64,000 bases of DNA, from the NCBI RefSeq assembly GCF_963676685.1, contig NC_092353.1, forward strand, positions 35,154,001 to 35,218,000, in the 5' to 3' direction. The notes under the pieces are model-generated. The model worked only from the letters and a program-made list of their open reading frames with translations. It had not been told where the DNA came from and did no database searches. This DNA is from Mytilus edulis. Lineage: Eukaryota. Shown one piece after another: positions 6,735-35,902 of this stretch; the stretch's first letter is position 1, and each line of letters begins with the position of its first letter. The translations under genes and the position numbers were made by a program.

Positions 6735-7901
6735 TTACATACTTGCATACAGAAAATATGCCACAAGAGTAATGACAATAATTAAATAGGAAGAAACTAA
6801 AAAAAACTTATCAAGCAAATAAGATACATATTTTCCATTATAGATCTGTTTTTCTTTTTTCTTACAATCAAAAAGAGTAACGTCCTGATTCCTTGTTTTC
6901 TTGTGAACGAAACAGTTCACGATCCTTCCAGGGAAATAGTCTTCCTGGTAGTACAGCTTGGTCGTTATAATGACAGCCACTACCGTTAATCCACTAATCA
7001 ACATGATAATAATCATAACAATCAACAGGAAACACATGGGATTAGAGGATGCTGGTATTGATGCTGAAACAAGCGTTAAAAATATGGCGTACGATAAAAG
7101 TATTGTCATTGATAATGATATGCGTTCTCCTGATTCTACCGGAAGTAAAAACACTAATGGATTAAGAAAGGACAGTAACATCGTTGGAAGGACAATCATT
7201 ATTATGTAATACATTGGTTTACGTTTTAATGATAGGCTCATATGAAACTTATAATAACCTTCTGGTTCTATTTGTGCATATGTTTTTCTAGTTACCACTT
7301 CCAAATTTGAGTCCTTTGTGTAAAAATCTAAATTAACTTCCTCAAAAAACGATATCAATTTGTAAAATGTAGCGCCTCCACCCCATGCAAGAAATTCTAA
7401 TAGGCATGGTTGGGTGTCAAAAGGAAATTTAGAAATATCAGTTTGACATTTTGCTTCTAAAATACTTCCTGGAGAATAATTAACAAACCCGCTGCTATTT
7501 ATATTTACTCTAAAAGCAGAATCAAATCCAACTGGTTCAAATTTTTTGGCATTGTTTTGTAGATAAAACCATGGTAACCATACATCTTTAGAATCCACAT
7601 CCAATGAATTTATATTTCCATATTCTACAGGATTCCATGATAATGATGTGTCTTTCCATACTATAGCTAATCCTCCTGTTAGAACTAGCGTTTCCTCGAC
7701 TTCTCTAAAAGAGTTGATTGATAATAAATAAAACGCCAGTGTAATTTCAAAAGGCTCTGATTGATTATTTAGAGGTGTGATATTATTCCTATAACTACTG
7801 AAAAGATCGTCATAAAGTTTTGTCACATTTTCAAAAGTTTGTCCTAAACCTGGCAAATGACATTGGAGAAATACCATGCAACAGTATATGAAACGATTCA
7901 T
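6735..7901 (-). CDS. Atypical nicotinic acetylcholine receptor-like Cys-loop subunit (non-alpha), copy 1
   Basis: 388-aa ORF with signal peptide, Cys-loop CQTDISKFPFDTQPC, M1-M2 LPVESGERISLSMTILLS and four TM segments. No vicinal CC in loop C. No introns in the CDS. Confidence 0.95.
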   Translation of the reverse strand: MNRFIYCCMVFLQCHLPGLGQTFENVTKLYDDLFSSYRNNITPLNNQSEPFEITLAFYLLSINSFREVEETLVLTGGLAIVWKDTSLSWNPVEYGNINSLDVDSKDVWLPWFYLQNNAKKFEPVGFDSAFRVNINSSGFVNYSPGSILEAKCQTDISKFPFDTQPCLLEFLAWGGGATFYKLISFFEEVNLDFYTKDSNLEVVTRKTYAQIEPEGYYKFHMSLSLKRKPMYYIIMIVLPTMLLSFLNPLVFLLPVESGERISLSMTILLSYAIFLTLVSASIPASSNPMCFLLIVMIIIMLISGLTVVAVIITTKLYYQEDYFPGRIVNCFVHKKTRNQDVTLFDCKKKEKQIYNGKYVSYLLDKFFLVSSYLIIVITLVAYFLYASM

Positions 7902-8967
7902 TTCTTAATAGTTCCACGTTTACTTGTTAAAAGAAGCAGAATGATATACACATACAAATTTCAAGTTTTAAATACGTTATAAAACGATATATTGTTGACG
8001 AATATCACGTCGTTTAATCTCTTGTTAAAATTTAATCACCTTGAGAAGTATATAAAGTAAATCGCTTTTTCATTTGCGTTAAGCTAGTTAAATTGGAAAT
8101 GACGTTTATACTCTGGAAGTAGTTCAAACTTTTAAATGGAACAGCATTATATTGTTAATTGAGTTTTATAATCACAATATTTAATAATCCGTATATAATA
8201 ATATTATTGTTGTAAATTTCATCAACAGTCGTCATTTATTGATGTATCGCCACTTGATTTACCCATAATGATACCTAGCAATATGAACTCTCAACACAAT
8301 TATGATGACGTGCGATTGCTGATTACTAGTAATGTAAAGTTGAAATATCAAATGCATATTGAGGACAAGAACATATTCAAATGAATTGAATCAGGACCCT
8401 CTTTTCCTTTCGATCATGGCAGTATCACTATATGTATTCTATGTTATTTTTTTAAAATATAAATTCGATAGCCTACTTGGTCGCTTAATCTATTCTTTTA
8501 TTTTATTGTGTGCACGAATTTCTAAACAAGTCTGTACTAAGTCAGGAATCTGATGTTGAGTAGTTCTCGTTGGTTGACGTAGTTCAGCAGTGTTGCTCGT
8601 TCTTTATATATATTAGCCCGTTAGTTTTCCTGTTTGAATGGTATTACACTAGTTATTTTGGGGGTCCTCTATAGCTTGCTGTTCAGTATGAGCCAAGGCT
8701 CCGTGTTGAAGATCTTACTTTGACCTCTAGTGGTTTACCTTTTACTTGGATGGAAGGTTGTCTCATTGGCAGTCATACCACATCTTCCTTTATATGTGTA
8801 AATACATATGTTGTTTAATTCCATTTCCATTTCATTTATAAGTATATCATCTCAGGAAATAGCAAAGAAAAAAGATAGTTTTTCTTTGTATGATCTATAG
8901 GCGAATAAATAGATCATGCATATCAGATCAAATTATCTTTCTAGTATAAATGTATGTCAATTAAAAA

Positions 8968-9280
8968 TTAAGGTCATCACTCAAGAAATTTTACGGTCGC
9001 CATCATGAGCTGATTATGCCAAAAGTGTATCAGAACTCATATCTGATATTCTCCCTATATCATAATAACCTTCCATCAATACCGGACTGAACAAAGAAAT
9101 AACACGACGGGTGCCGTATACGGAGCAGGAAATGCTTACCCTTCCGGAGCACCTGATTTCACTCCCGGTTTTTAGTGGAGTTCGCGTTGTTTCTTAATTA
9201 TTATTTATAACTGTTGATGTAAATGTCCTGTGTTTTTTTTGAGTCTTTGTTTACTCCTTGGTTTTGATTGTTATTGTCTT
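8968..9280 (+). mobile_element. Penelope-like element 3' fragment (RT thumb end plus 3' region)
   Basis: Encodes LRSSLKKFYGRHHELI, matching the C-terminus of the ORFs at 18785-19372 and 28591-28797. It is followed by the conserved gggtgcc...gcttacccttccggagcacctg motif. Confidence 0.8.
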
Positions 9281-10949
9281 AGATATGTTAATCTTTTTAT
9301 TTTAGAAATCTCCAAAATAAGAATAAATCTAAAAGAATAAGACTGACGCTAAAAGAGAAATAACGTTACGTTATTCAATTTTCCTTACCTACCTAAACAA
9401 ATCTTAACATATTTTAAAGACGGTTAAAGACGGTTTGAATATGGTATCACATTGATTTTAATAACTTAAACACATGTACATCGGTTTACAAGTATGATGC
9501 AATTTTCTACCGTAATACCTACCTTCTTGTTAAAATATAGGCAACTAATCATATTTAAATTTAAAATAATAAGCACTTCGTTGTACAAATAACCCATTCT
9601 TATTTAAAGTCTCATGAAGTGTGCTCATTAGATCTTGTAAACTCAATACATATAACTATTATCAAATTGATTCTCATTAAAGAGTTAAACTTGTTGGTAA
9701 GTTTGTGTTGTACTCTTACGCTACTCTAGAGGTTATGGGAAATACTATAAAGAGTAACAAAGTACGGACCTATAAAGTAAACTTCAAATGAACTTGTCCT
9801 TAAAAACTGTTAAAGCAAGCACTCTGCTATAGCAACCAAAGAGACGACTCGAATACAACTGTCATTGTCCTCACTTTATAAGGAATTTCCAGAATATGTA
9901 TAAAGTAATATGTCTTTTTACCGTGCAAGACTCCAATGGGAAGACAAGGAAAGATAAAAAACTATCGTAGGTAAGATACTTAGTTTGAAGGTTATATGAT
10001 GCGGACAGCAACTTAAATCAGTGTATTCATTACTGCAAAACGAAACTTGCGTTATTATCCTGAATTTTAAGAGAATTAAGAGAAGATATTTTTTTTTATA
10101 CATTTTGTATATTCATAAAAGGCTTTAAAAATAAACAATTCCAGAATCAAGATTATTTGAAGCAGATGTGCTATCTGTACGCCTACAGTAAATTGCATCA
10201 TTAAACTAAGTATCTTATCGCCGAGAGTTTTTTTTTATCTATCTTGTCTGTCCAAGATAGTCTTGCACGGTCCGTTTCAAAAGGAACTTACTTTGTGACT
10301 AAATAACATAAATAAAATTATGAAAGGTTCTTCATATTGGTATATAATATTTTGAAACGTTTCCAAACAAATAAACGAAAGTATAGATATACATAAATGT
10401 CTTTAATAAACACTTATAAATACACAGATCTATTTAAACATTCATAAATGTTGTTATGATTTAAAATTGAATTTAATAACTATACGTAAAGATAAAATTT
10501 TGAACCTGTTGTTGGTTGACAATACATTAAAATGTGATATTAAAAGAATTGATTAACACACCTTTCGTGCTCTAGCTTCAATGAATGTTCTAGTTCTAAA
10601 CTATTAATATAATCTCTAACTTAGAGACAGCTAATGAATGCTCACCAACAGTAAAGTATATTTGTCTGAAATGTTGTTAAACCTGCTCGGAGAAAATGTA
10701 CGAACTCCTAGACTTTCAAAGGTCATAATTAATGTGTTTAAACATTTATGCAATACGATTGTTAAACCTTATATGTCTCTTACGGTATAAAACACTAAAA
10801 CAGATCGAATGCTTGCATCAACTTACACAAATAAAGATTTGATTAAAGCCTGAAATTGTTGGCATTTTTTTTCTTTATTCATGTCAGTGTTAAAAAAGCC
10901 AAATGGTGAACAAAATAAGTAAAATCACAAACAAAAATGAACTTCTGAA

Positions 10950-11260
10950 GTTCTTAATAATAAAACGTATGTAGTACCCAGCCAATCCCAAGAAACGTCG
11001 AACATCTTCGGGTGATGTAGGTGTTGGCCAAGTCAGGACTTTCACGGTCTTTTCTGGATCTACTCCCACTCCATCTGCTGAAACAATGTGTCCCAGGAAC
11101 TTTACCTTGCGTTGAAAGAACGAACATTTCTTGGGTGCCAACTTCAGGTTCGCCTTTCTGATGCGGTCCACTACCAGTTGCAAGTTGTTGGGATGTTCCT
11201 CATATGTCTTTCCAAAGATAATCACATCATCAATGAACACAATGCATATTCTTAGGTGGT
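10950..11260 (-). mobile_element. Ty3/gypsy LTR retrotransposon RT fragment
   Basis: FIDDVIIFG...LKLAPKKCSF...VKFLGHIVS...DPEK...WPTP...VRRFLGLAGYY are gypsy RT motifs 5-7 and thumb. Truncated on both sides. Confidence 0.9.
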
Positions 11261-11261
11261 A

Positions 11262-11512
11262 ATCAGGTACCAGGATTATAATTTAATACGCCGACGCGCG
11301 TTTCGTCTACATAAACCTCATCAGTGACGCTCAGATCAAAATAGTTATAAAACCAAAAAAATACAAAGTTGAAGAGCATTGAGGACCCAAAATAGTAAAA
11401 AGTTGTGCCAAATACTGTCAAATACGGTAATGCAAAGAAAATCTATAATTATGACTATATCTGTTCAATGGTAATAAGTGCTGACTACTGGTTTGGTGAT
11501 ACCCTGGGGGAA
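11262..11512 (-). mobile_element. Retrozyme-like repeat with degenerate hammerhead (core ~11288-11332)
   Basis: The minus strand reads gagcgtca-CUGAUGA-gguuuauguagac-GAAA-CGCGCGUC-ggcg; stem II is mutated. The body has an internal replacement. Confidence 0.75.
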
Positions 11513-13174: not shown

Positions 13175-13477
13175 CAGCCCAGTAGTCAGCACTTCGGTGT
13201 TGACATGAATATCAATTATGTGACGTGAACATTTTTATAAATTTCCTGTTTACAAAACTTTAATTTTTCCGAAAAACTAAGGATGTTCTTATCTCAGGAA
13301 TAGATTACCTTAGCCGTATTTGGCACAACTTTTTGGAATTTGGGATCCTCAATGCTCTTCAACTTCGTACTTGTTAGGCTTGATAAATATTTTGATATGA
13401 GCGTCACTGATGAGTCTTGGGTAGACGAAACGCGCGTCTGGCGTATTAAATTATAACCCTGGTGCCTTTGATAACTA
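13175..13477 (+). mobile_element. Retrozyme-like non-autonomous retroelement (~300 bp)
   Basis: Reverse complement of the 5721-6040 repeat; ends in an intact hammerhead motif. Confidence 0.85.
13391..13450 (+). ncRNA. Type I hammerhead ribozyme, intact core
   Basis: Stem I gcguca(13401-06)/uggcgu(13439-44), extended by uuugaua/uauuaaa across a bulge. CUGAUGA 13407-13; stem II GUCU/AGAC; GAAA 13427-30; minimal palindromic stem III ACGCGCGU; GUC cleavage triplet ending at 13438. Confidence 0.9.
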
Positions 13478-15067: not shown

Positions 15068-16234
15068 ATGAATCGTTTCATTTTCTGTGTCTTGATATTA
15101 CTCCCGTTTCCTTTGCCGAGTTTTGGACAAACTTTAGTTAATGTGACAAAACTATATGATGATCTTTTCAGTAGTTATAGGAAAAATATTATACCTGTGG
15201 ACAATCATTCAGAACCATTAGAAATTTCACTGGCTTTCTATTTACTATCTATCAATTCTTTTAGAGAGATCGAGGAAACGCTCGTTCTAACAGGAGGATT
15301 ATCAGTGGTATGGAAAGACACATCATTATCATGGAATCCTGAAGATTATGGAAATACATATTTATTGGAAGTGGATTCAACTGATATTTGGATACCGTGG
15401 ATCTATCTGATAAATAATGCAAAGAAATTTGAACCTATCGGTTTTGATTCTGCTTTTAGAGTATTTTTAAATAGCAGCGGATTTGTTCAGTATTCCCCGG
15501 GAAGTATTTTAGAAGCAAAATGCAAAACTGATATTTCAAAATTTCCTCTTGATACCCAACCATGCCTCTTAGAATTTATCATTTGGAATGGAGATGCTGG
15601 TACTTACAAATTAATATCGTCGTTTGATGAAGTAAATCTAGATTACTACACAAAAAACTCAAATTGGGAAGTGGTAACTGGAGACACCTATGCACAACTA
15701 CACCCAAGCTATTATTTTAGGTTTTTTATGAGTTTATCATTAAAACGCGAACCAGTGTACTATATAGTAATGATTGTTCTACCGACTGTTTTGTTGTGTT
15801 TGCTCAATCCACTAGTGTTTTTACTTCCGGTAGAATCAGGAGAGCGTATATCCTTAGCAATGACAGTACTTTTGTCGTACGCCATATTTTTAACGCTTGT
15901 TTCAGCATCAATCCCAGCATCCTCTAATCCAATGTGTTTCCTGTTGATTGTTATGATAATTATCATGTTGATGAGTGGATTAACGGTAGTGGCTGTCATT
16001 ATAACAACCAAGCTATACTACGAAGAAGAATATTTCCCTGGAAGGATTATGAAATTTTTCCTGAACAGAAAGACAAAGAATCGGGACGTTACTCCTATGG
16101 GCTGTGAGAAAAAAGAGAAACAACTCTATAATGGAAAAAATGCATCTAATTTTCTCGACAAATTGTTTTTATTTTCCTCATATGCAATTATTGTAATAAT
16201 TCTTGTGGCTTTCTTTCTGTATGTAAATACGTGA
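15068..16234 (+). CDS. Atypical nAChR-like Cys-loop subunit (non-alpha), copy 2
   Basis: 388-aa ORF with Cys-loop CKTDISKFPLDTQPC, GER at the M2 entry and 4 TM segments. No vicinal Cys; intronless CDS. Confidence 0.95.
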   Translation: MNRFIFCVLILLPFPLPSFGQTLVNVTKLYDDLFSSYRKNIIPVDNHSEPLEISLAFYLLSINSFREIEETLVLTGGLSVVWKDTSLSWNPEDYGNTYLLEVDSTDIWIPWIYLINNAKKFEPIGFDSAFRVFLNSSGFVQYSPGSILEAKCKTDISKFPLDTQPCLLEFIIWNGDAGTYKLISSFDEVNLDYYTKNSNWEVVTGDTYAQLHPSYYFRFFMSLSLKREPVYYIVMIVLPTVLLCLLNPLVFLLPVESGERISLAMTVLLSYAIFLTLVSASIPASSNPMCFLLIVMIIIMLMSGLTVVAVIITTKLYYEEEYFPGRIMKFFLNRKTKNRDVTPMGCEKKEKQLYNGKNASNFLDKLFLFSSYAIIVIILVAFFLYVNT

Positions 16235-16249
16235 ACACTTATTAAGACT

Positions 16250-16530
16250 TAATCCAATGTGTTTCTTGTTGATTGGTATGATAACTATCATGTTGATCAG
16301 TGGATTTACGGTAGTGGCTGTCATTATAACAACCAAGTTATACTACAAGGACGACTATTTTCCTGGAAGTATTATGAAATTTTTCCTGTACAGAAAAACA
16401 AGGAATCAGGTCGTTACTCCTATGGATTGTGAGAAAAAAGAAAAACATCTCTTCATGTATCTAATTTTCTCGACAAATTGTTATTATTGTAATAATTATT
16501 GTGACGCTCATTCTATATGTAAATACATAA
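16250..16530 (+). pseudogene. 3' fragment (M3 to C-terminus) of an nAChR-like gene, frameshifted
   Basis: Begins ~15 nt after the copy-2 stop with taatccaatgtgtttc (NPMCF). It has two deletions relative to intact copies (near 16450 and 16480). The homologous stop is at 16528-16530. Confidence 0.9.
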
Positions 16531-17272
16531 ACACTTTTAAAGACTCGATAAATAAACATTTAAAAAATCATCTGCTAATATAGACGGTATATATATAAAG
16601 AAAACAGTAATATTATAAAAAAACATAACTCCGAGTTGAAATTCCTAAAGGAAAGGTTCTCATCAAATCAAAAGCTCAAACACATCAAACAAATCGATAA
16701 CAACTGCCATATTTCTGACTTGGTACAGGCATTTTCCTATGAAGAAAATGGTTGTTTAAACCTGGGTTTATAGCAAGCTAGATCTCTCACTTGTAGGACA
16801 GTCACATCAAATTCCATTATATTGACAACGATGTTAATAGTCACTGACGACTGTATGTTGACCTGGAGATGTCTTTTGGTTCCATAACCATCATCCTTTC
16901 ACTTCTAAAATAGACCCAAAAAAAAAGTGATTTGAAGCTTCTACGTAAAGAAAACGAGACATGAAATTCAAACTGTATAGTGAGACATTTAACTGCCATT
17001 AAAATAATAAAATGAATTGATCCTTTCTGATATCTTTAATCAATTTTATAGTACCAAAAAACAAATAATTGTCGTCGCAATCAATGTAAAAAGTACATAA
17101 AAAACGTTGACTTAAAGAAAAAAAGAAGAAAAGGTGAACTTGACATATTTACTAAATGGAATTTCAAAATATAAAATTTTATGTACTGGTAATTATAAAT
17201 GAGGGACATTTGTTCCGGGACTTATGTTTAGATTTTTTTGGGTCCTGGACCCAACGTAATAAATACTTAAAT

Positions 17273-17649: not shown

Positions 17650-17683
17650 TTAAATGATTATTGGTTGGAGTTGTTGATAAAAA

Positions 17684-19425
17684 AGGCAACAGTAGTATAC
17701 CGCTGTTCAAAACTCATAAATCTATGGACAAAAAACAAATTGGGGTAACAAACTAAAACTGAGGGAAACGCATTAAATTTTAGAGGAGAACAACGACACA
17801 ACATTAAAATGTAACACACACAGCAACAGAATAAGCATTAGACAAAATCCGATGAGAATAACCAATATAACATCAAAACCAAATACATGAATTTGGGATA
17901 GAAAAGTACCGTGACACGTCTTAAATTAAAGTAATTTGAATTCACACTCAAAAATAGGAGAAAACAAACGACACAACGGAAACACAACGTAAAAATGTTA
18001 CACACACAGAAACGAACTATGATATAAAAATGGCCATTTTCCTGACTTGGTACAGGACATTTTTAAAGAAAAAAAAATGGTGGGTTGAAACTATAGAACA
18101 ATTTATGCTATTGCAAACAGTAAATTTTATCAAATGAATATAAAAGATTTACATGATAAAACTGACGTCTTAATTAATTACAGAAAACAAACCCCGAATA
18201 CATAATACATTGAAGACCAACACAGAAAATAGACACACCCGACATACGAGGTGGTGAAATGGCACAATATTACTCCATGCAGACATGTGAATTTCTGAAA
18301 CAGCACAAATATGACGTCATATTTGAAAAATTATGTCTAAAAAATAAGATAGAAATAGGATTGATTTAAGATTATAATAGAACTAAATACTGATATTACA
18401 TTTAAACACAATGCACATTGCAACACTAATCAATAGCAATATATATATATTATATATGTCTGGTTTGTTTTGAATCTAACTTCAAACATAAAAATCGTAC
18501 AGATTACGTTGAACAAAATCAAAACTAGTAAATGAAAGAGGTGATTAATTTTCTTTACCATAACACATGAATTTAATAGAAAAGACGTCAACCAATTTGA
18601 CAAAAATGGATCAATTGATGAAAATTACAAATATAACATCAAACTAAATACATGAATTTGGGATAGATAAGTACCGTAACACGTCTTATAGTAATGCGAA
18701 TTCACACTCAGCAAAACAGTCACAATCGGGAATAAGTCACGTTCGGTAATTAAAAGATTAGACGACGTAATGACAAACCACAATCTACCATGTGGTAAAA
18801 ATGTCCTTAGCTAGTTTGGTCAAAGACACATCATATGGATCAATTAATTCGTGATGGTGTCCATAAAATTTTAATCTGTCCTTCTCATAACTTTGTTGAA
18901 GCAGTTTCTGTGTAAGGAGCACACTTCTGTATTTGAAGTCCGTATAGAGTGAACATGCACGAGAATAACGTATCAATTGTGATATGTAAACACCATACGA
19001 AGGGGCAGAGGGTATGTTACTGCTGAGAAATGGGAAATTGATAATTGGGAAGTTGAAATCGTCCCGTTTATCATAGATTTTCGTGTGAAGTCGTCTATCT
19101 GCGTCAATATTGAGGAAAAGATCAAGGTATGAAGTAGTCCTTCTATTATCAGTAGAATCCTTAATTTCAAGTTCGCTGGGATATATGAGATATAAGTATT
19201 GGCTGAAATATGGGTTATTCAATGATAGAACATTATCAATATATCGGAAACTAAAATTAAAGAATTTTGCAAGGTGCTTTTTCTTTTTGTCTTTTAGAAG
19301 GTTCTGAATGAATTCTGCTTCATACGAGTACAAAAACAAATCGGCCAGTAGGGGTGCACAATTAGTACCCATTGGAATACCGACTCTCTGTTGAAATATA
19401 AATCCTCCAAACTCAACAAATATAC
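17684..19425 (-). mobile_element. 5'-truncated Penelope-like retroelement (Naiad-type) with RT C-terminal half at 18785-19425
   Basis: FQQRVGIPMGTNCAPLLADLFL...FRYIDN...SYLDL...YDKRDDFNFPIINFPFLSSNIP...ISQLIRYSRAC. The ORF stops after the thumb with no C-terminal GIY-YIG. Catalytic YIDD is mutated to YIDN. The terminal segment recurs at ~12115-12195 and 13730-13875. Confidence 0.85.
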
Positions 19426-21928
19426 CTGATAAACAATATCACATTGTGGTGAATTAGACTTATCACCGAATTTATTCTTGAATGATCAACACAATGGGAG
19501 TAATATCTGCTACATCTTCCGAAGCACTCGATATCACCCCCGTTTTTTTAGTTTTAGTCAATTAGTTTTCTTTCTTGTGCTTAATGAATTGCCTTTTTGT
19601 CATTTTTTAACATTGCATTATCAATTTGGTTTTGATTTTTGAGTTTGGATCTTTCTCCTCTGTTTTACCTGATCAACAAAGAAAAATATTGTACTTAAAT
19701 ATGTTGCAAACTAAAGTTACATTCATCTTGTACCTTGGATGCATATAAAGTAATTTTATTTCATATTTATTATAAGGGATTTTTATAGAATATTGTAGAC
19801 TTTATCTACATTTAAGCCAAAAATTACTGTTAATCTTGTATCTAGTTATTAGTCTTTCTACATGTTCATGTACATATAGAAATTGCGTTACTGTAAACTG
19901 TCTTAGCTTTGATTAGCCTATTGAGAGGTGATTAAGTATCGTATTTTCAAATTTGCTTAATATGCAGTTATATAGAGAAAAATACAAGTTCGCGACCATT
20001 TATATTCACGTTGTTTTACTGCTCGCGAAAGTCGCGAAAGTAAATCCTTTTGGAACATTAGTTTTTTTTACAGTATATAGAATAACAAATGTTATATCCG
20101 GAGAAGACTTTAAAGGAGCTATATCAACAAAATACAAAATAAATAATTATGATCCATTAATGAAAGGTACTTGCAAGTGAACAAATCGACCTAGTTGAAT
20201 CCATATTCATGTAAACGTCACTTTAACCCCTTAGTAAGAGATGGATAACACATGAATCGTGCATGACTAGTTAGTAAAAGGAAATTAATGTCAACATTGG
20301 AAGTAAAAACTTCTGGTAAGATATTTGCTTCACAAAATTCATTGTTATACAGGTAATAACGAGGATTTTTTTTATATATCTTAAACCTATAATATGAAAT
20401 TAAACAGACCTAGAAAAATCAAATTGCACGAGTTCATTACCTATTTACATCTATTATTATGTTTACATCACTTATATAATCATCGGAAGTTTTCGAAGGT
20501 CAACTCGAAAGTAAATTAGATGGCGTCTAGACTTAAATACACACAAAACGATGAGACATATTATCGAGCACATGCCTTGTACCTTGCATATTTTATACTT
20601 TTTATTTTTTGAATAAATGTTTTAATATGTTATAATGCAATATGAGAATTCAACAGCTAGTGCTCTTTAATAATATATATTGAATGCAAGAATACATGAC
20701 CTATCTATTGTACAACTTATGTATGAAATTGAGAATGGAAATGGGAAATGTGTCAAAGAGAAAACAACCCGCATTTAGTAAAGAAGGCCACCAATGGGTC
20801 TTGATCAATTAAAGAGTATATCGAATGACAACTTGGACTGACGATTTTTTTTAAAGAACATAGAGTTCCATGTCAAAACAGAAATGCAATATCATGTCTG
20901 AAAGAAGAAAACAAATAAAATCTACAAACCACAACAGCGCAACATATGACTGAGGACATTCGTAGTTTTCCTTTGTTTGATATGCAAAAATATTGTATCA
21001 ATATAATCAACATTACTTATGTGACAGAAAAAAATTGAGTAATTAACAACATATGATATAGAATTTTATCTTATTCTTACATGGTCAAATTAAAAAAAAA
21101 TATATTTTCCCCATTTTTTGAATTGTTTATTGATGTCATGACTTTCAACATTGTAAAACTTCTAACTTATAAATTAACTTTATTTCCATTGTACTTTCCT
21201 TGATTTTCAATTTACAAGGATTATTTAGCAATTATGATGTTTTGGTGATTTCATGGGTAACAAATGATCTAATGAATAAACACTTGACAATATGTTTCCA
21301 ATGCTACAATTAAAAAAAAATATAAAGACATTTAAAGAGAGAACATAACATAAATCATGAATCAACTGGAACCAACATGAATTTGATAAAGACAGATACT
21401 TAAAAGAATTGGATTTAGCAACCAAGAACGACAATAACACCCGTATAGGGGTTACACCAATACATGACGACTATTGAAACATTGTACACAAAAGTTGAGT
21501 TAATCTCTCGTTTTCCATTAAAAAAGTAACATTCCTATAGAAATGCTAATTAACCTTTCGTGCCCAATCACACTGGTAGAATTGCAATTGGAATCCAATA
21601 ATAAATGAATCTTTATATGAGCACGTATTAATGAAAGCCAATCATCAATTATTACAATGCGAAAACATTTGAAGCTTCTTTCAGTATATAAACGTCATTA
21701 CGTATATAATTGTCTTAAGATATTTAAAAGGCAATGTTCCTTCAAACGAGATATGCATTTTACGGTATTTAAACTTTGAAAAGAGATTAAACAGTGTTAT
21801 ATACGTCAACAATATTATTTGTGAACCATATTTAAACGCTTAATTCATATCTGTGTGTATCAGTCTGTGTAATGCAACTTTTATTTACCATTAAATGTGT
21901 AACTGCTTGAACTTGACGAACATAAGAA

Positions 21929-23095
21929 ATGGCTCGTTTCATATTCTGCTTCATGGTATTACTCCAGTTTCTTTTGCCAAGTTTGGAACAAACCTTAGAA
22001 AATGTGACAAAACTATATGATAATCTTTTCAGTAGTTACAGGAGAAATATCAAACCTGTAAACAATCATTCAGAACCAATAGAAATATCACTGGCTTTCT
22101 ATTTATTATCTATCAATTCTTTTAGAGAGATCGAGGAAACACTCGTTCTAACAGGAGGATTATCAGTGGTATGGACAGACACATCGTTATCATGGAATCC
22201 TGAAGATTATGGAAATACATATTCATTGGAAGTGGATTCTACAGATGTATGGTTACCGTGGGTTTATCTGATAAATAATGCAAAAGAGTTTGAACCTGTT
22301 GGTTTTGATTCTGCTTTTAGAGTATTTATAAATAGCAGCGGATTAGTTCAGTATTCTCCGGGAAGTATTTTAGAAGCAAAATGTCAAACTGATATTTCAA
22401 AATTTCCTCTTGATACCCAACCATGCAAATTGGAATTTATTATTTGGAATGGACATGCTGGTACTTACAAAATAATATCGTCATTTGATGAAGTAAATCT
22501 AGATTACTACACAAAAAACTCAAATTGGGAAGTGGTAAATGGAGACACTTATGCTCAACTAGATCCAAGAGGTTATTATAGGTTTTTTATGAGTCTATCA
22601 TTAAAACGCGAACCAGTGTACTATATAGTAATGATTGTTCTACCGACTGTTCTGTTGTGTTTGCTCAATCCACTAGTGTTTTTACTTCCGGTAGAATCAG
22701 GAGAGCGTATATCCTTAGCGATGACAGTACTTTTATCGTACGCCATATTTTTAACGCTTGTTTCAGCATCAATCCCAGCATCCTCTAATCCAATGTGTTT
22801 CCTGTTGATTGTTATGATAATTATCATGTTGATGAGTGGATTAACGGTAGTGGCTGTCATTATAACAACCAAGCTATACTACGAAGAAGAATATTTCCCT
22901 GGAAGGATTATGAAATTTTTCCTGAACAGGAAGACAAAGAATCAGGACGTTACTCCTATGGGCTGTGAGAAAAAAGAGAAACAACTCTATAATGGAAAAA
23001 ATGCATCTAATTTTCTCGACAAGTTGTTTTTATTTTCCTCATATGCAATTATTGTAATAATTCTTGTGGCTTTCTTTCTGTATGTAAATACGTAA
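21929..23095 (+). CDS. Atypical nAChR-like Cys-loop subunit (non-alpha), copy 3
   Basis: 388-aa ORF with Cys-loop CQTDISKFPLDTQPC. The TM half is nearly identical to copy 2. Confidence 0.95.
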   Translation: MARFIFCFMVLLQFLLPSLEQTLENVTKLYDNLFSSYRRNIKPVNNHSEPIEISLAFYLLSINSFREIEETLVLTGGLSVVWTDTSLSWNPEDYGNTYSLEVDSTDVWLPWVYLINNAKEFEPVGFDSAFRVFINSSGLVQYSPGSILEAKCQTDISKFPLDTQPCKLEFIIWNGHAGTYKIISSFDEVNLDYYTKNSNWEVVNGDTYAQLDPRGYYRFFMSLSLKREPVYYIVMIVLPTVLLCLLNPLVFLLPVESGERISLAMTVLLSYAIFLTLVSASIPASSNPMCFLLIVMIIIMLMSGLTVVAVIITTKLYYEEEYFPGRIMKFFLNRKTKNQDVTPMGCEKKEKQLYNGKNASNFLDKLFLFSSYAIIVIILVAFFLYVNT

Positions 23096-24892
23096 ACACT
23101 TATCAAGACTCAATAAATTAACTTTTGAAAAAATAACCTGCTAACATAGACAAAATATATATAAAGAAAAAGTAATATAACAAAACTACTGAACTCCGAG
23201 GAAAATTAACAAAGGAAAGGTCCTAATGAAATGGCAAAATAAAACGCTTAAACACATCAAACAAATAGATAACAACTGCCATATTGCTGATGTGGTACAG
23301 GCATTTTCCTATGTAGAAAATGCTGGTTTGAACCTGGTTTTATAGCTAGCTAAACCTCTCATTTGAATTACAGTCACATCAAATTCCATTATATTGACAA
23401 CGATGTTAATAGTCACTGAAGACTGTATGTTGACCTGGAGATGTCTTTTGATTTCATACCCATCATCCTTTCACTTCTGGAATAGACCCCAAAAAAGTTA
23501 TATGAAGCTTCTACATAAAGAAAACGAGACATGAAATTCAAACTGTATGGTAAGACATTTAACTACCATGCAAATAATAAAATGAATTGATCTTTCCTAA
23601 TATCTTTAATCAATATTTAAGTTATTTACATTTACATGTAATTTGTTTTTTAGTATCATAGTACCCTAAAATAAATAATTTCCTTCGCAATCAATGTAAA
23701 AAGTAAATAAAAACATTGCCTAAACGAAAACGAAAGAAAATAAGAACTTGATGTTTTTACTAAAAGAAATTTTTAAATATTGAATTTTATTTACTCGCTA
23801 TTATAAATGGAGGGCATTTGTTTTTGGAATTTACGCTACGCTTTTGTTTTGTCCTGTACCCAATTTAATAAAAACTTATATGATTAATGGCTGGAGTCGA
23901 TGATATACAAGATAACTTTGTTGTGCTGTTGTTTTGTCTATGTAACGCCTACCTGGTTTTTATGTATACGTCTGCTTTTTAAAACTAATTGTAATAATTG
24001 TTGTGTGACATTTTACTTTAATAAAATGTATAAAGTTTTCTTATATCTTTTGATTTATACATATATATGTTTGTAGCCACACAATGTTAGATCTTTAAAC
24101 TTGCGTTAGAAATTTTTTGTTCAGCGAATTTATATATTTAATAACACACTTTTTTCATTCAACGTTTGAAAGTAATGTATTTTTGTTTTATTTGAGATAC
24201 TAGTATTTGTTTGTTTATACTCTTTTAATCGCAATGTTGATGTTTTTAATTAAAAAAATGTAACAAAAATACAGAACTCCAAGGTAAATCAAAATGGTGT
24301 TGTCAATACAAGTTACTATATTCAAACTTTATAAACCAACGAAATGAATGAAAAATGGCCGTTATATTTGGTAAAGGTATTTCCAAATTGGTTGGTCCAA
24401 CCTGGTTTTAAAGATATTTAATCCGCCATAAAGTATATGGTTAATATCCTGTTTATCTAGTCAGTATTGTGTGTATAAATTGGTTTGTACCTTCTAAAAT
24501 ATATAAATCTTATGAATCACGCAAAATATGAGCGAGACAAAAATCACTTACGGTTTAGAGACGGAATCACCGCCCCAAAAAAATTGCGATTTAGTTCGAA
24601 ATTTCGAAACCGTCTCACGACGCATTCAAGCAAAGTGGATATTATTAATGAGGATAGAGCTTGAGATCTAAAAGAGCTGGTTTCACCCGGCAAATATTAA
24701 TGATTTTAGAATTCAATCAGTGGTTGTCTTCAGTAAGTATTTTTCCTGTCATTAAAGAAGTTTCGTGTAATGATAAGACTGCCGTCTCTGTAAAATTCTG
24801 CTGACAAAAAAAAAATATAATTATGTTTTAGGGTCGTTTGGTTGCCATCACATTGACACATATTTATTTACCCATTTCGTGTGTAAATTGGT

Positions 24893-24985
24893 ATCAAAGG
24901 TACCAGGATAATTATTTCATACGACAGACGCGCGTTTTGTCTTTTAATAAGACTCATCAGTGACGCTAAGATCAAAATAGTTAAA
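24893..24985 (-). mobile_element. Truncated retrozyme-like repeat, hammerhead with G12->A
   Basis: The minus strand reads cguca-CUGAUGA-GUCUU...AAGAC-AAAA-CGCGCGUC; GAAA has become AAAA. Confidence 0.75.
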
Positions 24986-25664
24986 TTGCCATACAGATTA
25001 ATCAATATTACCAATTTTGCTTGAATAGTATTAATCACACAAATATGCGTACCATAAAATGTCAAGTGTGTAGTGTCTATAATGAATAGTCTACCCTAAT
25101 AGATGTAGGACTGTTTGACGACCAATCTTAAATTAAAAAAAAAGGGATCCGACAAAATCCCCAAAAGATAACAAAACTAGAAAGTGCGTTGAAACTTGGC
25201 TTTTACATTTCAAAGACGCAAACATTCAAAAATTAAACTGAATAAACTATTATAGTTATAAAAATAGTGTTATTTCTTAAATGCGGAAGTGGAATAATTA
25301 ATCCTTTTTTACCACTTACAGTAAATCGAAGTGTTTTGACACAGTTGATTGGTGTAATGATGAAATTTCCCGAAATTGCGCGGATGATTGTGACTTTAGT
25401 TCATTCATACATGAACATCTATGGCTCATGCTATTCGCTTGAAAATTGTTTATAACTAAAGTGGATACGAATGATGCATAACATAATGGTATTTACAGTT
25501 TGCACTGCAATTTGAAATGCAGAACCTTTTCAAAGACCTCAAGGGAGCCATTTTGCTTAGTTCTTTGATTTCAAATTCAGATATGTTGATTATTTCCTGT
25601 CTCCCTTTTACCTACACATCAGTCAGTCAGTACTTACATTCCACAGTTAGCTTGTCATAAAGGA

Positions 25665-28815: not shown

Positions 28816-28849
28816 GACTTATTGACCAAAGTCCGTTTTTAGAGACACA

Positions 28850-31315: not shown

Positions 31316-31493
31316 AACTCATCATAGATACAAAGATTAATTTTGTATTTACGCCAGAAGCGCGTTTCGTGTTCAAAAGACTCATCAGTGACGATCGAAT
31401 GCAAAAAAAATAAAAAGGCCAAATAAAAGTACGAAGTTGAAGAGCATTGTGGACCTAAATTCCTAAAATTTTACAGCTAAGGTAATCTATTCC
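31316..31493 (-). mobile_element. Retrozyme-like repeat (variant subfamily), degenerate hammerhead ~31351-31393
   Basis: The minus strand reads cguca-CUGAUGA-gucuuuugaacac-GAAA-cgcgcuUC-uggcg. Confidence 0.7.
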
Positions 31494-34400
31494 AATTCGT
31501 TTTTGATTTGACCTTCCAACTGCTTTGATTTGAATACGACTTGACTGTCTTGTGTAGAGGAAACTGAGAGAGGAAACGCGCATTATTAGCCTAGATTAAT
31601 TCGTTTAGAAGAAAAATACAACTGCTTTATTAGACAGTTCAAATTAATCACGTTTCACATTAACTGAATATTGTGACCTTTCTAACAAGTGAATTAACAC
31701 TACTGCCTCAAATACCTGTAACAAGTCAAGGCATTTTATTTTGTCATTAGTTTGGGGTCTTTCCGTTTAGAATTTTCCTCGGGGTTCGGTATTTTTTGTG
31801 ATATTACTTTTCACTCACTGTTATTCTATAAGTATATGGTATCCTCCTAACAATAGTCTGCAATTCTTTATTTAATTGATGCTATCATTTTCTGTAAATT
31901 AATAAAATGTAAAGTTGTTAAAATTACTAGAAAGTAAATAACAAAATTACAAACTCCGAGGAATATTCACAAAGAAAAGTTCTTAATCAAATGGCAAAGT
32001 AAAAAGCTCAAACATATTATATAATTGAATAACCACTGTCATATTCCTGACTTTGCAAAGGTATTTTTTAGGTAGAACATGGGTGATTTAACCCTGGTTT
32101 TGTAGCTAACTAAACCTCTCACGTGTATGATACCCGCATAAAGTTGCATTATATTGACAACTACGTGTGAACAAAATAAACAGACATAATAGGTAAAAAT
32201 GTCAAACATAAGGGAACAGCAGTCAGTATTGTGTTATAATCGTAGTCACTATATAAACAAAACAAAAACACAACTAGGCATACACACACAGTACACCAGC
32301 AAAAACGAAATCCAAGACACAAAAATTCACCATAATACAAAAGCACTATGACGGAAAGTATCGAGCCTGTAATGAACATTAACAAATATTTATGACTCAT
32401 TTATGGCTGGATTACAAATTCTGTCAATTTCATATGTGGAAAGGTTTTATCTCTTAATTTGTGACAGCTGGTACCAGAAAGAGCATTGTCAAATACAAAG
32501 TATACCGATATACCACCCTGAGATAATGAACATACATCACTCTTCAGTGTTTACTTACATTTTACAATATTTGTATTTTACTAATAAAAATGTTCGCTTT
32601 AGTGATAAAATTATAAGGACAGATTATTTGTTTTACCAGCGTCGATCCAGTATTGTTTTTGTCTTCCCGATATTTGATACTGAAGGTTACAATACATCAT
32701 TAGATTGTATGGGAGCAGCCATTTTATGAGCATAACATGGTATTCAGAATTAAAAGTATGGCTAATCCTAATTGGTTGATATGTGCGCCCGTTATTTTTT
32801 ATTATTAGAGACTTCGTGCTTTTTGCATTATATCATGGGCCTAATTATTTTCCTTAGCCCTAACGGAAATGAAATGTCTTTTCAACTCTAGGACGAGACA
32901 CGTATTTTTAAGTGCAAAAGTGATAGGCATGGGAGATAGTTACAAAATACGTTAAGAAAAGCAACGCGAACCTATATTTTTTGGACCAAAATATACTGTC
33001 CGAATAACTTTTCTGTAATTCTAGCAAGGTTTTGTTAAAAAAAACTTTCTATAGTCTGTATCTCAAAAAAGGCTATCATTGTCGCCTATGGGGAAATTAA
33101 TTGTTTATTTCAATCTGAAGAGCATTTTAATATGTCGCGTTCTTCGTTCTTGTTTCTCAAAGAGGTTCCAAAAATGGCGGAAATTAAAGATACTCAATTA
33201 AATTTAATTTGAAAATCTTTGAAAGTAACACAAAAATTGTTTTTTTCAGAAGATCCATGAATATTTGTAATGCATTTTATAGTTTGCTTGAATCTTTTCG
33301 GTGATTTAAAAACTTTACAAATCCTGTGCGCCCGAAGAGCTTTTCTCAATTTAATTTCATCTGAGTGCTAAATTAAAAAAAAATAGAAAACCAAAGATGT
33401 GTGACCAGGTAACTTCTTGAACGTACGCGGAGCTATTTGCCCAAAGGGAAACGAAAAACAGTACAGAAATGAATAAATGTCCTGCAAAAACACCAGGTTG
33501 TCCTTCTTTTTATCCTGATGATAAACACAAGTTTGTGGTTGCCTCCGGATGATCCAAAATTCTGATCTCTTCTATTCTGCCTCTTTCAACATAGCAAAAC
33601 AGCATAAGATTATTATTTCAAAATATGTCGTTTTAGTCATAAACAGGTGAGTTTAACTGTTTAAAGTAAAGGAAATATGATAATTTATGTAATATTAATG
33701 GTTAGATAATGAGTAAAACTTGCTTTTGGGGGAAAACACATGTACTTGAAAAGGAAGAACTATAGTGTTAGACACTAATGAAAATTACCCAGGAGGTCTT
33801 TAATTCATCAAATAGAAGATAAACTACCAGCTGAAGCATCAAATGAAAAACATAATTTTTCATGAATACAATACTATTTATTTCAAAAAGGGACTTCATA
33901 ATCGCAGTTTATACACGTGTCAGGAGCCTGTTGTTCAGGTGTTGTCACAGGGGCACTTTATAGGTTGCTTTTCGTTGTGAGACGAAACTCCGTGGGGAAG
34001 GCCGAACGTGGACCTATTATTGTTTACTTTTTACACATTGTGACATGAATTAGTTGTTTCATTGGAACTGATACCACATCTTCCTATTTATATGTAGAGA
34101 ATCGGCAAAAATGAATACGAGGCAACCCGTTTAAATGGAGAAGAAACAAAATCCGTTTCGCTTTTAATTTAAACAATAGTTTGTTCCAAATAAGGTGTGT
34201 TGTATACAAAAAAATAAGTTTATAAAGTGGTTTGAAATCTGCGAATAGTGTCCTGGGATATAGACAAATATTGTATAATAAACTAATTAGGCAAACAAAT
34301 ATGCATAAACCATAGAACATCTATCACACGTATCATATCATTGTTTTGTTTGTAGTTTGAGAGTCAATAGCAATTTCATTAAAGAGCATTACCAGAAATT

Positions 34401-34735
34401 ATGTATTAATATATTGATGTAATTTCATTGTCATATAAATGGAATTTCCTGTGTTTAGAAGAAAACATTAAAGGACCGCAATAATTTTTGTATTTGTATG
34501 AGCAGGTGATAATGTAAACTTAAACTAAACTGAGTTGAATTAGACACAAAAGAGTCAACTTTACTTCAAATGCTGAAACTTATATTGTTTCTGTGAGTTT
34601 AAATATCACGTCTTTTCGCAATAAATATAACGTAATTTGAATTTACTGAGAGGCAAACCAGGATATACATTTGGTGAGCAACTGTGGGGGATTTCCAAGT
34701 AAACGTATGTTACTGCTTGCAAAAGTCACCGAAAT

Positions 34736-35902
34736 ATGAATATTATCGTGCTCTGTTTCCTGGTACTTCTCCAGGTGGTAATGCCATGTGTAGGACAAAC
34801 TTTAGAAAATGTGACCAATCTTTATGACGATCTTTTCAGTAATTACAGGAGGAGTATCATACCAATGAACAATCATTCAGAGCCTTTTAAAATTAATATG
34901 GCTTTTTATCTATTGTCAATCAATTCGTTTAGAGAGGTCGAGGAAACGCTCGTTCTTACAGGAGGATTAATTATGGTATGGAAAGACACATCATTATCAT
35001 GGAATACTGTAGATTATGGAAATATAAATTCATTGGATGTGGATTCTAAAGATGTATGGCTACCATATATGTATCTAGTAAACAATGCAAAAGAATTTGA
35101 ACCAATTGGCTTTGATTCTGCTTTTAGAGTAAATATAAATAGCAGCGGTTTTGTCCATTATTCTCCAGGAAGTATTTTAGAAGCAAAATGTCAAACTGAT
35201 ATTTCTAAATTTCCTCTTGATACTCAGCCTTGTCTATTGGATTTTCTTGCATGGGGTGGAGGCGCTACATTTTACAAATTGATATCATATTTCGATGCAG
35301 TTAATTTAGATTTTTACACAAAGGACTCACATTGGGAAGTGGTAACTAGAGACACATATACACACCTAGAACCAAAAGGTTATTATAGTTTTCGTATGAG
35401 CCTATCATTACAACGAAAACCAATGTATTATATAGTAATGATTGTCCTGCCAACGATATTACTGTCCTTAATAAATCCATTAGTGTTTTTACTTCCGGTA
35501 GAATCAGGAGAACGTATATCCTTAGCTATGACAGTACTTTTATCGTACGCTATATTCTTAACGCTTGTTTCTGCATCAATCCCAGCATCCTCTAATCCCA
35601 TGTGTTTCCTGTTGATTGTTATGATAATTATCATGTTGATAAGTGGATTAACGGTAGTGGCTGTCATTATAACAACCAATCTATACTTCCAAGGAGAATA
35701 TTTCCCTGGAAAGATTATGAAATTTTTCCTGTACAGAAAAACAAGGCACCAGGACGTTACTCCTATGGATTGTGAGAAGAAAGAAAAACAACTCTATAAT
35801 GGAAAACATGTATCTGATTTTCTCGACAAGTTGTTTTTATTTTCTTCATATGTAATTATTGTAATAATTCATGTGACGTTCTTTCTGTATGTAAATACGT
35901 AA
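34736..35902 (+). CDS. Atypical nAChR-like Cys-loop subunit (non-alpha), copy 4
   Basis: 388-aa ORF with Cys-loop CQTDISKFPLDTQPC, GER-M2 and 4 TM segments; intronless CDS. Confidence 0.95.
   Translation: MNIIVLCFLVLLQVVMPCVGQTLENVTNLYDDLFSNYRRSIIPMNNHSEPFKINMAFYLLSINSFREVEETLVLTGGLIMVWKDTSLSWNTVDYGNINSLDVDSKDVWLPYMYLVNNAKEFEPIGFDSAFRVNINSSGFVHYSPGSILEAKCQTDISKFPLDTQPCLLDFLAWGGGATFYKLISYFDAVNLDFYTKDSHWEVVTRDTYTHLEPKGYYSFRMSLSLQRKPMYYIVMIVLPTILLSLINPLVFLLPVESGERISLAMTVLLSYAIFLTLVSASIPASSNPMCFLLIVMIIIMLISGLTVVAVIITTNLYFQGEYFPGKIMKFFLYRKTRHQDVTPMDCEKKEKQLYNGKHVSDFLDKLFLFSSYVIIVIIHVTFFLYVNT

What the first reader, a model, noticed from the sequence alone, without database searches (positions are those of the whole stretch)
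6735..35902. Tandem cluster of intronless non-alpha Cys-loop receptors with a dismantled acetylcholine pocket: candidate bivalve chemosensory receptors
Seen: four intact ORFs of exactly 388 aa. Loop C has no vicinal Cys. The loop A WxPD...Y motif becomes WxPW/Y...Q/I/V. The loop D Trp position is Gly (LTGGL). Only the loop B Trp (AWGGG / IWNG) and some loop C Tyr remain. The M3-M4 loop is only ~50 aa. Known: bivalves have large expansions of intronless nAChR-like genes, and cephalopod chemotactile receptors are clustered, intronless, ACh-insensitive nAChR derivatives lacking vicinal Cys. Inference: these may be environmental ligand-gated cation channels (contact chemosensation or settlement cues) that evolved in parallel with, or are related to, the cephalopod receptors.
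Basis: partly seen in the sequence, partly recalled or inferred. Interest (0 to 1): 0.8.

Follow-up and report, generated by a model that had tools for sequence, protein, structure and literature searches.

The report
Mussel orphan nicotinic-like channel gene cluster
This stretch of a blue-mussel chromosome holds four intact, intron-free genes (and one broken copy) for nicotinic-receptor-like ion channels that lack the usual acetylcholine pocket; they are an ordinary example of a bivalve gene expansion already described, and the proposed taste or smell role remains untested.

Summary
Four uninterrupted 388-aa ORFs encode complete Cys-loop channel subunits. A 5'-truncated fifth copy sits 17 bp after gene 2. 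Alignment to human alpha7 confirms every residue claim: no loop-C Cys pair, loop A WxPW/Y..Q/V/I, loop D Gly, loop B Trp kept. The genes are under purifying selection (dN/dS 0.27-0.42) and keep cation-channel pore and gating motifs.

The altered pocket is not special to this cluster. Of 70 intronless paralogues sampled from the same Mytilus genome, 0 have the Cys pair, 1 has the loop-A Tyr and 5 have the loop-D Trp. All 3 sampled exons of intron-containing genes carry the alpha-type loop-B and loop-C (Cys-pair) motifs.

The genes are no closer to octopus or squid chemotactile receptors than to alpha7. I could not obtain cephalopod sequences for a joint tree.

Expression evidence is weak. Three RNA-seq runs gave zero reads over gene 3, and one PacBio transcript library gave low-depth contigs.

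The expansion, its intronless tandem arrays and its divergent binding sites are in print (PMC6896357, PMC13174522). This scan has already reported two similar arrays elsewhere in this genome (s1-832318, s1-834665). The chemosensory role is unsupported speculation.

The parts
6735..7901 (-). Gene 1 (type I): intact 388-aa Cys-loop subunit ORF, with signal peptide, ligand-binding domain and M1-M4
   Evidence: The M. galloprovincialis orthologue P0121 (XP_076079065.1, 'beta-3-like') is 99% identical.
15068..16234 (+). Gene 2 (type II): intact 388-aa subunit ORF
   Evidence: The orthologue P0003 (XP_076079064.1, 'beta-like 1') is near-identical.
16251..16583 (+). 5'-truncated fifth copy (pseudogene remnant). 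It matches codons 287-354 (M3 to M3-M4 loop), then the frame is lost. Homology of its 3' flank runs on to about 17272.
   Evidence: tblastn shows 72-79% identity to aa 287-354. Flank homology to the gene 3 and gene 4 3' flanks is. It has no Pfam hit on its own.
21929..23095 (+). Gene 3 (type II): intact 388-aa subunit ORF. It is 91.5% identical in protein to gene 2.
   Evidence: AlphaFold2 model: mean pLDDT 83.6, pTM 0.67.
23096..24039 (+). Candidate 3' UTR of gene 3
   Evidence: Contigs from the PacBio transcript library (X14) run from 22089 to 24039. They end 14 nt after an AATAAA at 24020-24025. About 0.8-0.9 kb of 3' flank is shared with gene 4 and the truncated copy. This is weak evidence: AATAAA is common here and DNA in the library is not excluded.
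34736..35902 (+). Gene 4 (type I extracellular domain with a type II-like C-terminus and 3' flank): intact 388-aa subunit ORF
   Evidence: Extracellular-domain dS to gene 1 is 0.243 against 0.512 to gene 3. M4 dS to gene 3 is 0.095 against 0.410 to gene 1. The 3' flank is homologous to gene 3, not gene 1.
21451..21928 (+). Upstream block shared between genes 2 and 3 (about 460-480 nt; 150-260 nt shared with gene 1): candidate 5' UTR or promoter inside the duplicated unit
   Evidence: blastn of the flanks. Function not tested.

Best explanation
The window holds a young, Mytilus-specific tandem cluster: four functional paralogues and one truncated remnant. It belongs to the known bivalve expansion of intronless nicotinic-receptor-like genes. 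Each gene encodes a full subunit of a pentameric, most likely cation-selective, ligand-gated channel. The parts are a signal peptide, an extracellular ligand-binding domain with the Cys-loop, four membrane helices and a short cytoplasmic loop.

Gating and pore elements are intact: the FPFD Cys-loop, the pre-M1 Arg, Glu at -4' and -1', and the 9' Leu. The orthosteric site is non-canonical. On the principal face the loop B Trp and two loop C Tyr are kept, while the loop A Tyr and the loop C disulfide are absent. On the complementary face the loop D Trp is Gly.

From this I infer that these are not canonical ACh-binding alpha or beta subunits. They are either gated by another small ligand, or they serve as non-binding partners. 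The retained Trp and Tyr residues would suit a cationic amine, but that is a guess.

The cluster arose by duplication of a unit of about 2.5 kb, roughly the size of an mRNA, followed by gene conversion in the channel half. Shown here: sequence, domains, selection and phylogenetic place within the genome. Inferred: ion selectivity and loss of canonical ACh binding. Unknown: ligand, partners and tissue.
For: Domains: Pfam LBD plus TM in 4 of 4 genes. Fold: the best solved relatives are nAChR subunits, with alpha7 at 148 bits, Foldseek TM about 0.7 and VIA Z 29-30.

Pore: M2 reads VESGERISL(S/A)MT(I/V)LLSYAIFLTLVSAS in all four genes.

Selection: pairwise dN/dS is 0.27-0.42 overall, 0.25-0.39 in the extracellular domain and 0.00-0.16 in TM1-3.

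Orthologues: proteins 98-100% identical occur in M. galloprovincialis for genes 1-3. Relatives occur in M. californianus and M. coruscus. The Mytilus clade has 100/100 support, and the type I / type II split predates M. coruscus and M. californianus.

Place in the genome: the four genes form a 100% clade on a 0.58 stem. That clade lies inside a 30-row clade (99%) of intronless paralogues. At least 106 protein matches and 150 LBD matches were scored in the genome, out of 378 and 494 candidates.

Pocket: W173 is invariant and Y208 and Y216 are near-invariant in 16 subfamily members. 0 of 139 stored relatives and 0 of 70 sampled paralogues have a loop C Cys pair.

Gene conversion: genes 2 and 3 have dS 0.218 in the extracellular domain against 0.046 in TM1-3.

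Literature: PMC6896357 (Results parts 1-2 read) reports 99-217 nAChR genes in bivalves, many of them intronless and in tandem arrays. [quoted passage not shown]
Against: There are no functional data. Three Illumina RNA-seq runs of a near-identical organism gave zero depth over the gene 3 coding sequence (6-18% of each run was read). The only RNA-labelled holder is a low-depth PacBio library in which DNA cannot be excluded. Ion selectivity and loss of ACh binding are read from motifs, not measured. ACh-gated channels without the Cys pair exist (recalled: nematode ACC channels), so ACh gating is not excluded. Loop C columns are poorly alignable among distant paralogues.
Confidence: 0.8

Rival explanations
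1. One reading: the subunits form ACh-insensitive, environmentally gated cation channels in sensory epithelia (contact chemosensation or settlement cues). They would be a bivalve analogue or relative of cephalopod chemotactile receptors.
For: They share general traits with CRs: nAChR-derived, intronless coding sequence, clustered, canonical ACh residues lost. Amino-acid variation among the four paralogues is enriched in the binding loops: 38 of 87 loop sites against 32 of 121 other extracellular sites, Fisher p = 0.012. Very low expression in bulk RNA-seq would be compatible with a receptor of rare sensory cells. PMC13174522 (sections 3.4 and 4.2 read) raises the same idea for divergent molluscan clades and reports a 'CR-like' clade that includes bivalves.
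Against: The traits are generic to the genome's intronless paralogues (0 of 70 with the Cys pair, 1 of 70 with the loop A Tyr, 5 of 70 with the loop D Trp), so they do not mark a sensory subset. Similarity to CRT1 and CRB1 is lower than to alpha7: 106 against 148 bits, Z 22.3 and 21.6 against 29.3, and 24% against 28% identity. None of 5 paralogue groups tested has the octopus receptor in the part of its PDB hit list that was shown, apart from gene 1 at about rank 55. dN/dS in the extracellular domain is 0.25-0.39, with no domain-wide positive selection. No tissue evidence. By the alpha7 alignment, the complementary-face positions are small or polar (Gly77, Asn/His/Gln141, Ser143), unlike the aromatic, hydrophobic CRT1 pocket described in 10.1101/2025.03.03.641191 (passages read). 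The residue correspondence to CRT1 was not checked.
Confidence: 0.13
2. The subunits are non-binding accessory partners. They would co-assemble with canonical alpha subunits, encoded elsewhere in the genome by intron-containing genes, into heteromeric ACh receptors and tune their properties.
For: Both binding faces are incomplete while the pore and gating elements are conserved. Canonical alpha-type exons with GSWTYDG and YxCC are present in the genome: 3 of 3 exon-level matches sampled. NCBI's automatic names for the orthologues are 'beta-3-like' and 'beta-like 1'. Accessory subunits of this kind are known in vertebrates (alpha5, beta3; recalled).
Against: W173 is invariant and Y208 and Y216 are near-invariant, and variation is enriched in the loops. 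Both suggest the pocket is used rather than idle. The automatic names are inconsistent (alpha-7-like, beta-3-like, CHRNA7). More than 100 such genes seems too many for accessory roles. No co-expression data.
Confidence: 0.2
3. The copies are transcriptionally silent retrogene duplicates on the way to becoming pseudogenes.
For: Zero reads in 3 RNA-seq runs. One truncated copy lies in the cluster. PMC6896357 (Results part 2 read) reports that more intron-poor than intron-rich nAChR genes have no or low expression in oysters.
Against: All four frames are intact. dN/dS is 0.27-0.42 overall and 0.00-0.16 in TM1-3. Near-identical intact orthologues exist in M. galloprovincialis, and intact relatives exist in M. 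californianus and M. coruscus. Contigs from a transcript library cover gene 3 and end just after a polyadenylation hexamer.
Confidence: 0.05

Closest known systems
Bivalve / lophotrochozoan expansion of intronless, tandemly arrayed nAChR-like genes (Jiao et al. 2019, PMC6896357)
   Same: Intronless coding sequence, tandem array, lineage-specific paralogue clades and divergent ligand-binding residues. Hundreds of LBD candidates occur in the same genome.
   Different: Nothing of kind. This is a Mytilus-genus subfamily on a long stem that the paper, which did not include Mytilus, does not describe.
Cephalopod chemotactile receptors CRT1 / CRB1 (PDB 8eis, 9e6b, 8eiz)
   Same: nAChR-derived pentameric channel fold, no loop C Cys pair in the window genes, clustered and intronless genes (the last two for CRs as stated in PMC13174522).
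   Different: Only 24% structure-based identity and lower scores than alpha7. No evidence of a hydrophobic pocket, of sensory expression or of clade membership. No domain-wide positive selection.
Alpo4, orphan nAChR-like receptor of the annelid Alvinella pompejana (PDB 8bx5; PMC10338036)
   Same: Lophotrochozoan, lacks the loop C Cys pair, ligand unknown, nAChR fold (VIA Z 24.7, 23% identity).
   Different: Alpo4 keeps the full aromatic cage, including the loop A and loop D aromatics (passages of PMC10338036). The mussel genes have lost both.
Vertebrate alpha7 nAChR (closest solved sequence relative)
   Same: Best PDB sequence match (3.8e-42, 148 bits). Same Cys-loop, pre-M1 and M2 motifs, including SGE(K/R) and the 9' Leu.
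   Different: No YxCC, no loop A Asp or Tyr, no loop D Trp, no 20' Glu, and a cytoplasmic loop of about 45 aa instead of more than 100.

Membership tests
Cys-loop pentameric ligand-gated ion channels, nAChR-type branch | Neur_chan_LBD plus Neur_chan_memb domains | tested here: met
   4 of 4 genes are above the Pfam cut-offs.
Cys-loop pentameric ligand-gated ion channels, nAChR-type branch | Cys-loop C-x13-C with the FPFD core, and four membrane helices | tested here: met
   C152 and C166 are invariant in 114 relatives. Model helices are 230-252, 259-281, 287-317 and 356-387.
Cys-loop pentameric ligand-gated ion channels, nAChR-type branch | Cation-type M1-M2 / M2 motif (Glu at -1', no Pro-Ala-Arg). 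The meaning of the motif is recalled. | tested here: met
   VESGER precedes M2 in 4 of 4 genes. Selectivity itself was not measured.
Alpha-type nAChR subunits | Vicinal Cys pair at the tip of loop C | tested here: not met
   No CC in loop C in 4 of 4 genes.
Canonical ACh-binding complementary (beta-type) subunits | Loop D Trp (alpha7 W55 column) | tested here: not met
   Gly in 4 of 4 genes.
Bivalve intronless nAChR-like expansion (PMC6896357) | Uninterrupted coding sequence, tandem arrangement, nesting among same-genome intronless paralogues | tested here: met
   RefSeq orthologue proteins have the same 388-aa length.
Cephalopod chemotactile receptors (CR clade) | Phylogenetic membership in, or sisterhood to, the CR clade | not testable with these tools
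Proxy scores do not favour it.
Cephalopod chemotactile receptors (CR clade) | Expression in a contact-sensory epithelium | tested here: inconclusive
   0 reads in 3 RNA-seq runs of unknown tissue. Low-depth contigs in one PacBio transcript library.
Cephalopod chemotactile receptors (CR clade) | Hydrophobic orthosteric pocket; gating by poorly soluble ligands and not by ACh | not testable with these tools

The most novel reading that the evidence does not exclude
The cluster encodes ACh-insensitive channels gated by external chemicals in a small population of mussel sensory cells. That would make it an independent, bivalve invention of nAChR-derived chemoreceptors parallel to cephalopod CRs. 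The binding-loop differences between type I (genes 1 and 4) and type II (genes 2 and 3) would then set ligand range.
Probability: 0.12. Interest if true: 0.7.

Novelty: new member of a known kind. Interest (0 to 1): 0.25.

Why it matters
If any of the hundred-plus orphan nicotinic-like channels of mussels turned out to sense environmental chemicals, two things would follow. It would give bivalves an ionotropic chemoreceptor family. It would also show that the octopus invention has a parallel elsewhere in molluscs. This cluster is a compact test case: four intact, easily cloned, intron-free genes of two pocket types. However, nothing found here singles it out from the many other arrays in the same genome.

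Tried and rejected
A joint phylogeny with cephalopod CRs was not possible. CR sequences exist here only as PDB chains, which the protein tools do not accept. The 120 relatives listed by the word search carried only Mytilus names or no name.

As a proxy I ran PDB sequence searches for five paralogue groups: gene 1, L041, L032, L045 and L065. I was looking for a 'CR-like' group in the genome. The top hits were always vertebrate nAChR subunits, so this led nowhere.

The ESM Atlas look-up only repeated the family assignment.

Pocket geometry could not be analysed because model coordinates are not returned.

Site-wise tests of positive selection were not attempted, since only four coding sequences were available.

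The clade lists of PMC13174522 and the residue figures and expression tables of PMC6896357 might say which clade these Mytilus genes fall in, or how related genes are expressed.

The pseudogene reading was considered and rejected on the selection evidence.
Full report
OBSERVATION. The window holds exactly four ORFs of at least 200 aa. All are 388 aa: 6735-7901 (-), 15068-16234 (+), 21929-23095 (+) and 34736-35902 (+). I call them genes 1 to 4 in window order. All four match Pfam Neur_chan_LBD (E 5.9e-35 to 7.2e-38) and Neur_chan_memb (E 3.1e-10 to 1.8e-11). tblastn of the proteins against the window finds these four and one further piece. That piece is at 16251-16454 and is 72-79% identical to residues 287-354, starting 17 bp after the stop of gene 2. 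Its ORF (16257-16583) loses the frame before M4. Its 3' flank is homologous to the 3' flanks of genes 3 and 4. It is therefore a 5'-truncated fifth copy. Protein identity is 91.5% between genes 2 and 3 and 75-79% for the other pairs.

RESIDUE CLAIMS.
- Loop D is LTGGL, with Gly at the W55 column.
- Loop A is W-x-P-W/Y, with Gln, Val or Ile at the Y93 column.
- The loop B Trp is kept (W173).
- Loop C has no Cys pair. Two Tyr (Y208, Y216) are kept and are near-invariant in a 16-member subfamily alignment, where W173 is invariant.
- The Cys-loop (C152, C166), the FPFD core, the pre-M1 Arg and most of M2 are invariant or nearly so in 114 relatives.
- M2 reads VESGERISL(S/A)MT(I/V)LLSYAIFLTLVSAS. 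This gives Glu at -4' and -1' and Leu at 9', with no acidic residue at 20'. I read these, from general knowledge of the family, as a cation-type pore.

The AlphaFold2 model (mean pLDDT 83.6, pTM 0.67) has the expected beta-sandwich and four helices, with a short M3-M4 segment.

WHOSE GENOME. The closest database proteins are from Mytilus: M. galloprovincialis at 98%, M. californianus at 89% and M. coruscus at 83%. The window lies on contig C10, which is 84,842,022 bases long. C13 (75,045,669 bases) matches likewise. I take the genome to be M. edulis. The window's proteins for genes 1-3 are already in NCBI and UniRef. The exact gene 4 sequence is not in the collection. The M. galloprovincialis orthologues carry automatic names: 'neuronal acetylcholine receptor subunit beta-3-like' (XP_076079065.1) and 'acetylcholine receptor subunit beta-like 1' (XP_076079064.1).

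HOW SPECIAL IS THE POCKET? A protein search of the whole genome scored 106 matches out of 378 candidates at E <= 1e-10. Nearly all were full-length in one open frame. Outside the cluster the best are only 45-46% identical. The Pfam LBD model scored 150 of 494 candidates.

I took 70 of these single-frame paralogues (L001-L070).
- 0 of 70 have a Cys pair in the loop C region.
- In a MAFFT alignment, 1 of 70 has Tyr at the loop A Y93 column (L065; two more have Phe).
- 5 of 70 have Trp at the loop D column.
- 60 of 70 keep the loop B Trp.

Loop C columns of distant paralogues are not reliably aligned, but the absence of CC does not depend on alignment. Likewise, 0 of 139 stored relatives have CC between residues 170 and 260. 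In contrast, 3 of 3 exon-level LBD matches that I could still fetch from intron-containing genes carry GSWTYDG and Y-x-C-C. So canonical alpha subunits exist in this genome. The 'dismantled' site is the common state of its intronless expansion, not a mark of this cluster.

EVOLUTION. In a tree of 68 paralogues (L015 and L028, shorter than 320 aa, were left out), the four genes form a 100% clade on a 0.58 stem. That clade lies inside a 30-row clade with 99% support (quick method, SH-aLRT only).

In a careful tree of 27 rows, the Mytilus sequences form a 100/100 clade of 12. It has two sub-clades. Type I holds genes 1 and 4 plus a M. coruscus protein. Type II holds genes 2 and 3, a M. californianus protein and a M. 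coruscus fragment. Genes 1-3 pair with M. galloprovincialis proteins and gene 4 pairs with a protein of an older M. edulis record. Support for the two sub-clades is moderate (91/59 and 89/94).

Unnamed relatives at 46-57% identity (P0008-P0013, from Logan and ENA assemblies) lie just outside.

Pairwise dN/dS (NG86) is 0.27-0.42 overall, 0.25-0.39 in the extracellular domain and 0.00-0.16 in TM1-3. This indicates purifying selection and no domain-wide positive selection.

Genes 2 and 3 have dS 0.218 in the extracellular domain but 0.046 in TM1-3. Gene 4 is nearest gene 1 in the extracellular domain (dS 0.243 against 0.512 to gene 3). It is nearest gene 3 in M4 (dS 0.095 against 0.410 to gene 1) and in its 3' flank. 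Both patterns fit gene conversion or unequal exchange. They agree with two other first-reader notes on this window (s1-839923, s1-839969).

Copies share 150-480 nt upstream and, for gene 3, gene 4 and the truncated copy, about 0.8-0.9 kb downstream. The duplicated unit is therefore about 2.5 kb.

Amino-acid variation among the four is enriched in the six binding loops: 38 of 87 sites against 32 of 121 other extracellular sites, Fisher p = 0.012. Fixed type I / type II differences are not significantly enriched (9 of 87 against 7 of 121, p = 0.29). Loops are also surface-exposed, so this is only suggestive.

RELATION TO CEPHALOPOD RECEPTORS. By sequence, the octopus sensory receptor (8eis) scores 106 bits against gene 1. 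Alpha7 scores 148 bits, and the 5-HT3A entries shown score about 105-109. Foldseek's 50 best matches are all nAChR subunits.

The search against all PDB cluster representatives gave these values:
- adult muscle nAChR, chain E of 9gu0: Z 29.9, 24% identity
- alpha7: Z 29.3, 28% identity
- beta2: Z 29.1, 23% identity
- Alpo4: Z 24.7, 23% identity
- CRT1: Z 22.3, 24% identity over 288 residues
- CRB1: Z 21.6, 24% identity over 312 residues

Four other paralogue groups also have vertebrate nAChR subunits as their top PDB hits, with no octopus entry in the lists shown. None of this is a phylogeny, and fast-evolving CRs could score low even if related. It gives no support for kinship, and I could not build the joint tree.

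EXPRESSION. Nineteen runs from 10 studies hold at least half of gene 3's sampled words. Only one is on record as RNA: X14, a PacBio transcript library labelled 'mollusc metagenome'.

I laid reads on 20001-25000 at 97% likeness or better. Three Illumina RNA-seq runs were used, from an organism whose other run (X4) holds 88% of the gene's sampled words. They gave depth 0 in every bin over the coding sequence. About 6, 6 and 18% of the runs were read, which is 8.7, 8.3 and 12.7 million records. All laid reads sat on short repeats.

X14 contigs cover 22089-22349, 22418-23357 and 23336-24039 at depth 2-4. The last ends 14 nt after an AATAAA at 24020-24025. This fits a polyadenylated transcript with a 3' UTR of about 0.94 kb. 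However, AATAAA is frequent in this AT-rich flank, and DNA in the library is not excluded. The tissues are unknown to me. Expression is therefore at best low and is unproven.

WHAT IS KNOWN. I read the following papers, to the extent stated.
- PMC6896357 (abstract and Results parts 1-2). It describes 99-217 nAChR genes in five bivalves, many of them intronless and in tandem arrays. Only 33 of 132 oyster genes are alpha-type, and 13 of those 33 have fully conserved principal sites. Expression is highest in gills and there are stress and immune responses. The authors suggest that the diverse domains may bind diverse ligands.
- PMC13174522 (preprint, 2026; abstract, sections 3.4 and 4.2). It resolves 15 molluscan clades. 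It places CRs as a mainly cephalopod clade and reports a 'CR-like' clade that includes bivalves. It proposes that divergent clades may be ionotropic chemoreceptors. Its supplements, which might assign these genes, were closed.
- PMC10338036 (passages). It describes the orphan annelid receptor Alpo4.
- PMC11682238 (passages). It states that CRs are known only from cephalopods and did not look for nAChR-like genes in bivalve tentacles.
- Searches found no paper that tests a bivalve nAChR-like gene as a chemoreceptor.

This scan has already reported two similar arrays in this genome (s1-832318, s1-834665). Their follow-ups reached the same verdict.

VERDICT. The genes are functional-looking, orphan, probably cation-selective nicotinic-like subunits. 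They form a young Mytilus-specific cluster within a described expansion. The chemosensory reading is not excluded, but it rests on traits shared by most intronless paralogues of the genome. It gains nothing from the expression, similarity or selection tests I could run.

Noticed in passing
window 16251-17272 (+): A 5'-truncated fifth receptor copy begins 17 bp after the stop codon of gene 2 and keeps the 3' flank shared with genes 3 and 4. It looks like a relic of unequal exchange within the array.
   Followed up: partly
window 10890-11240 (-) and 18785-19372 (-): Retroelement debris lies between the receptor genes. The first ORF matches the end of the Pfam reverse-transcriptase model RVT_1 (E 5.9e-12). 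The second (195 aa) has no Pfam hit.
   Followed up: partly
window 20669-20835, 23174-23507 and 24844-25000: Short repeats are heavily covered in all three RNA-seq runs by reads that match only in part. They are probably transcribed dispersed repeats, not part of the receptor transcripts.
   Followed up: no
window 62001-64000: GC content jumps to 47%, against about 31% elsewhere. A 110-aa Pro/Gly/Thr-rich ORF at 63280-63612 (-) has no Pfam hit. Another first-reader note (s1-839901) covers this region.
   Followed up: no
G000 C7:23935877-23936506 (L031:984-2609, -): The strongest LBD match in the genome (232 bits) is a 542-aa single-frame gene. It has a canonical complementary face (loop D Trp, WKPD in loop A, GSWTY in loop B), no loop C Cys pair and a long cytoplasmic loop. 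It is a canonical-looking non-alpha subunit that also appears intronless.
   Followed up: partly
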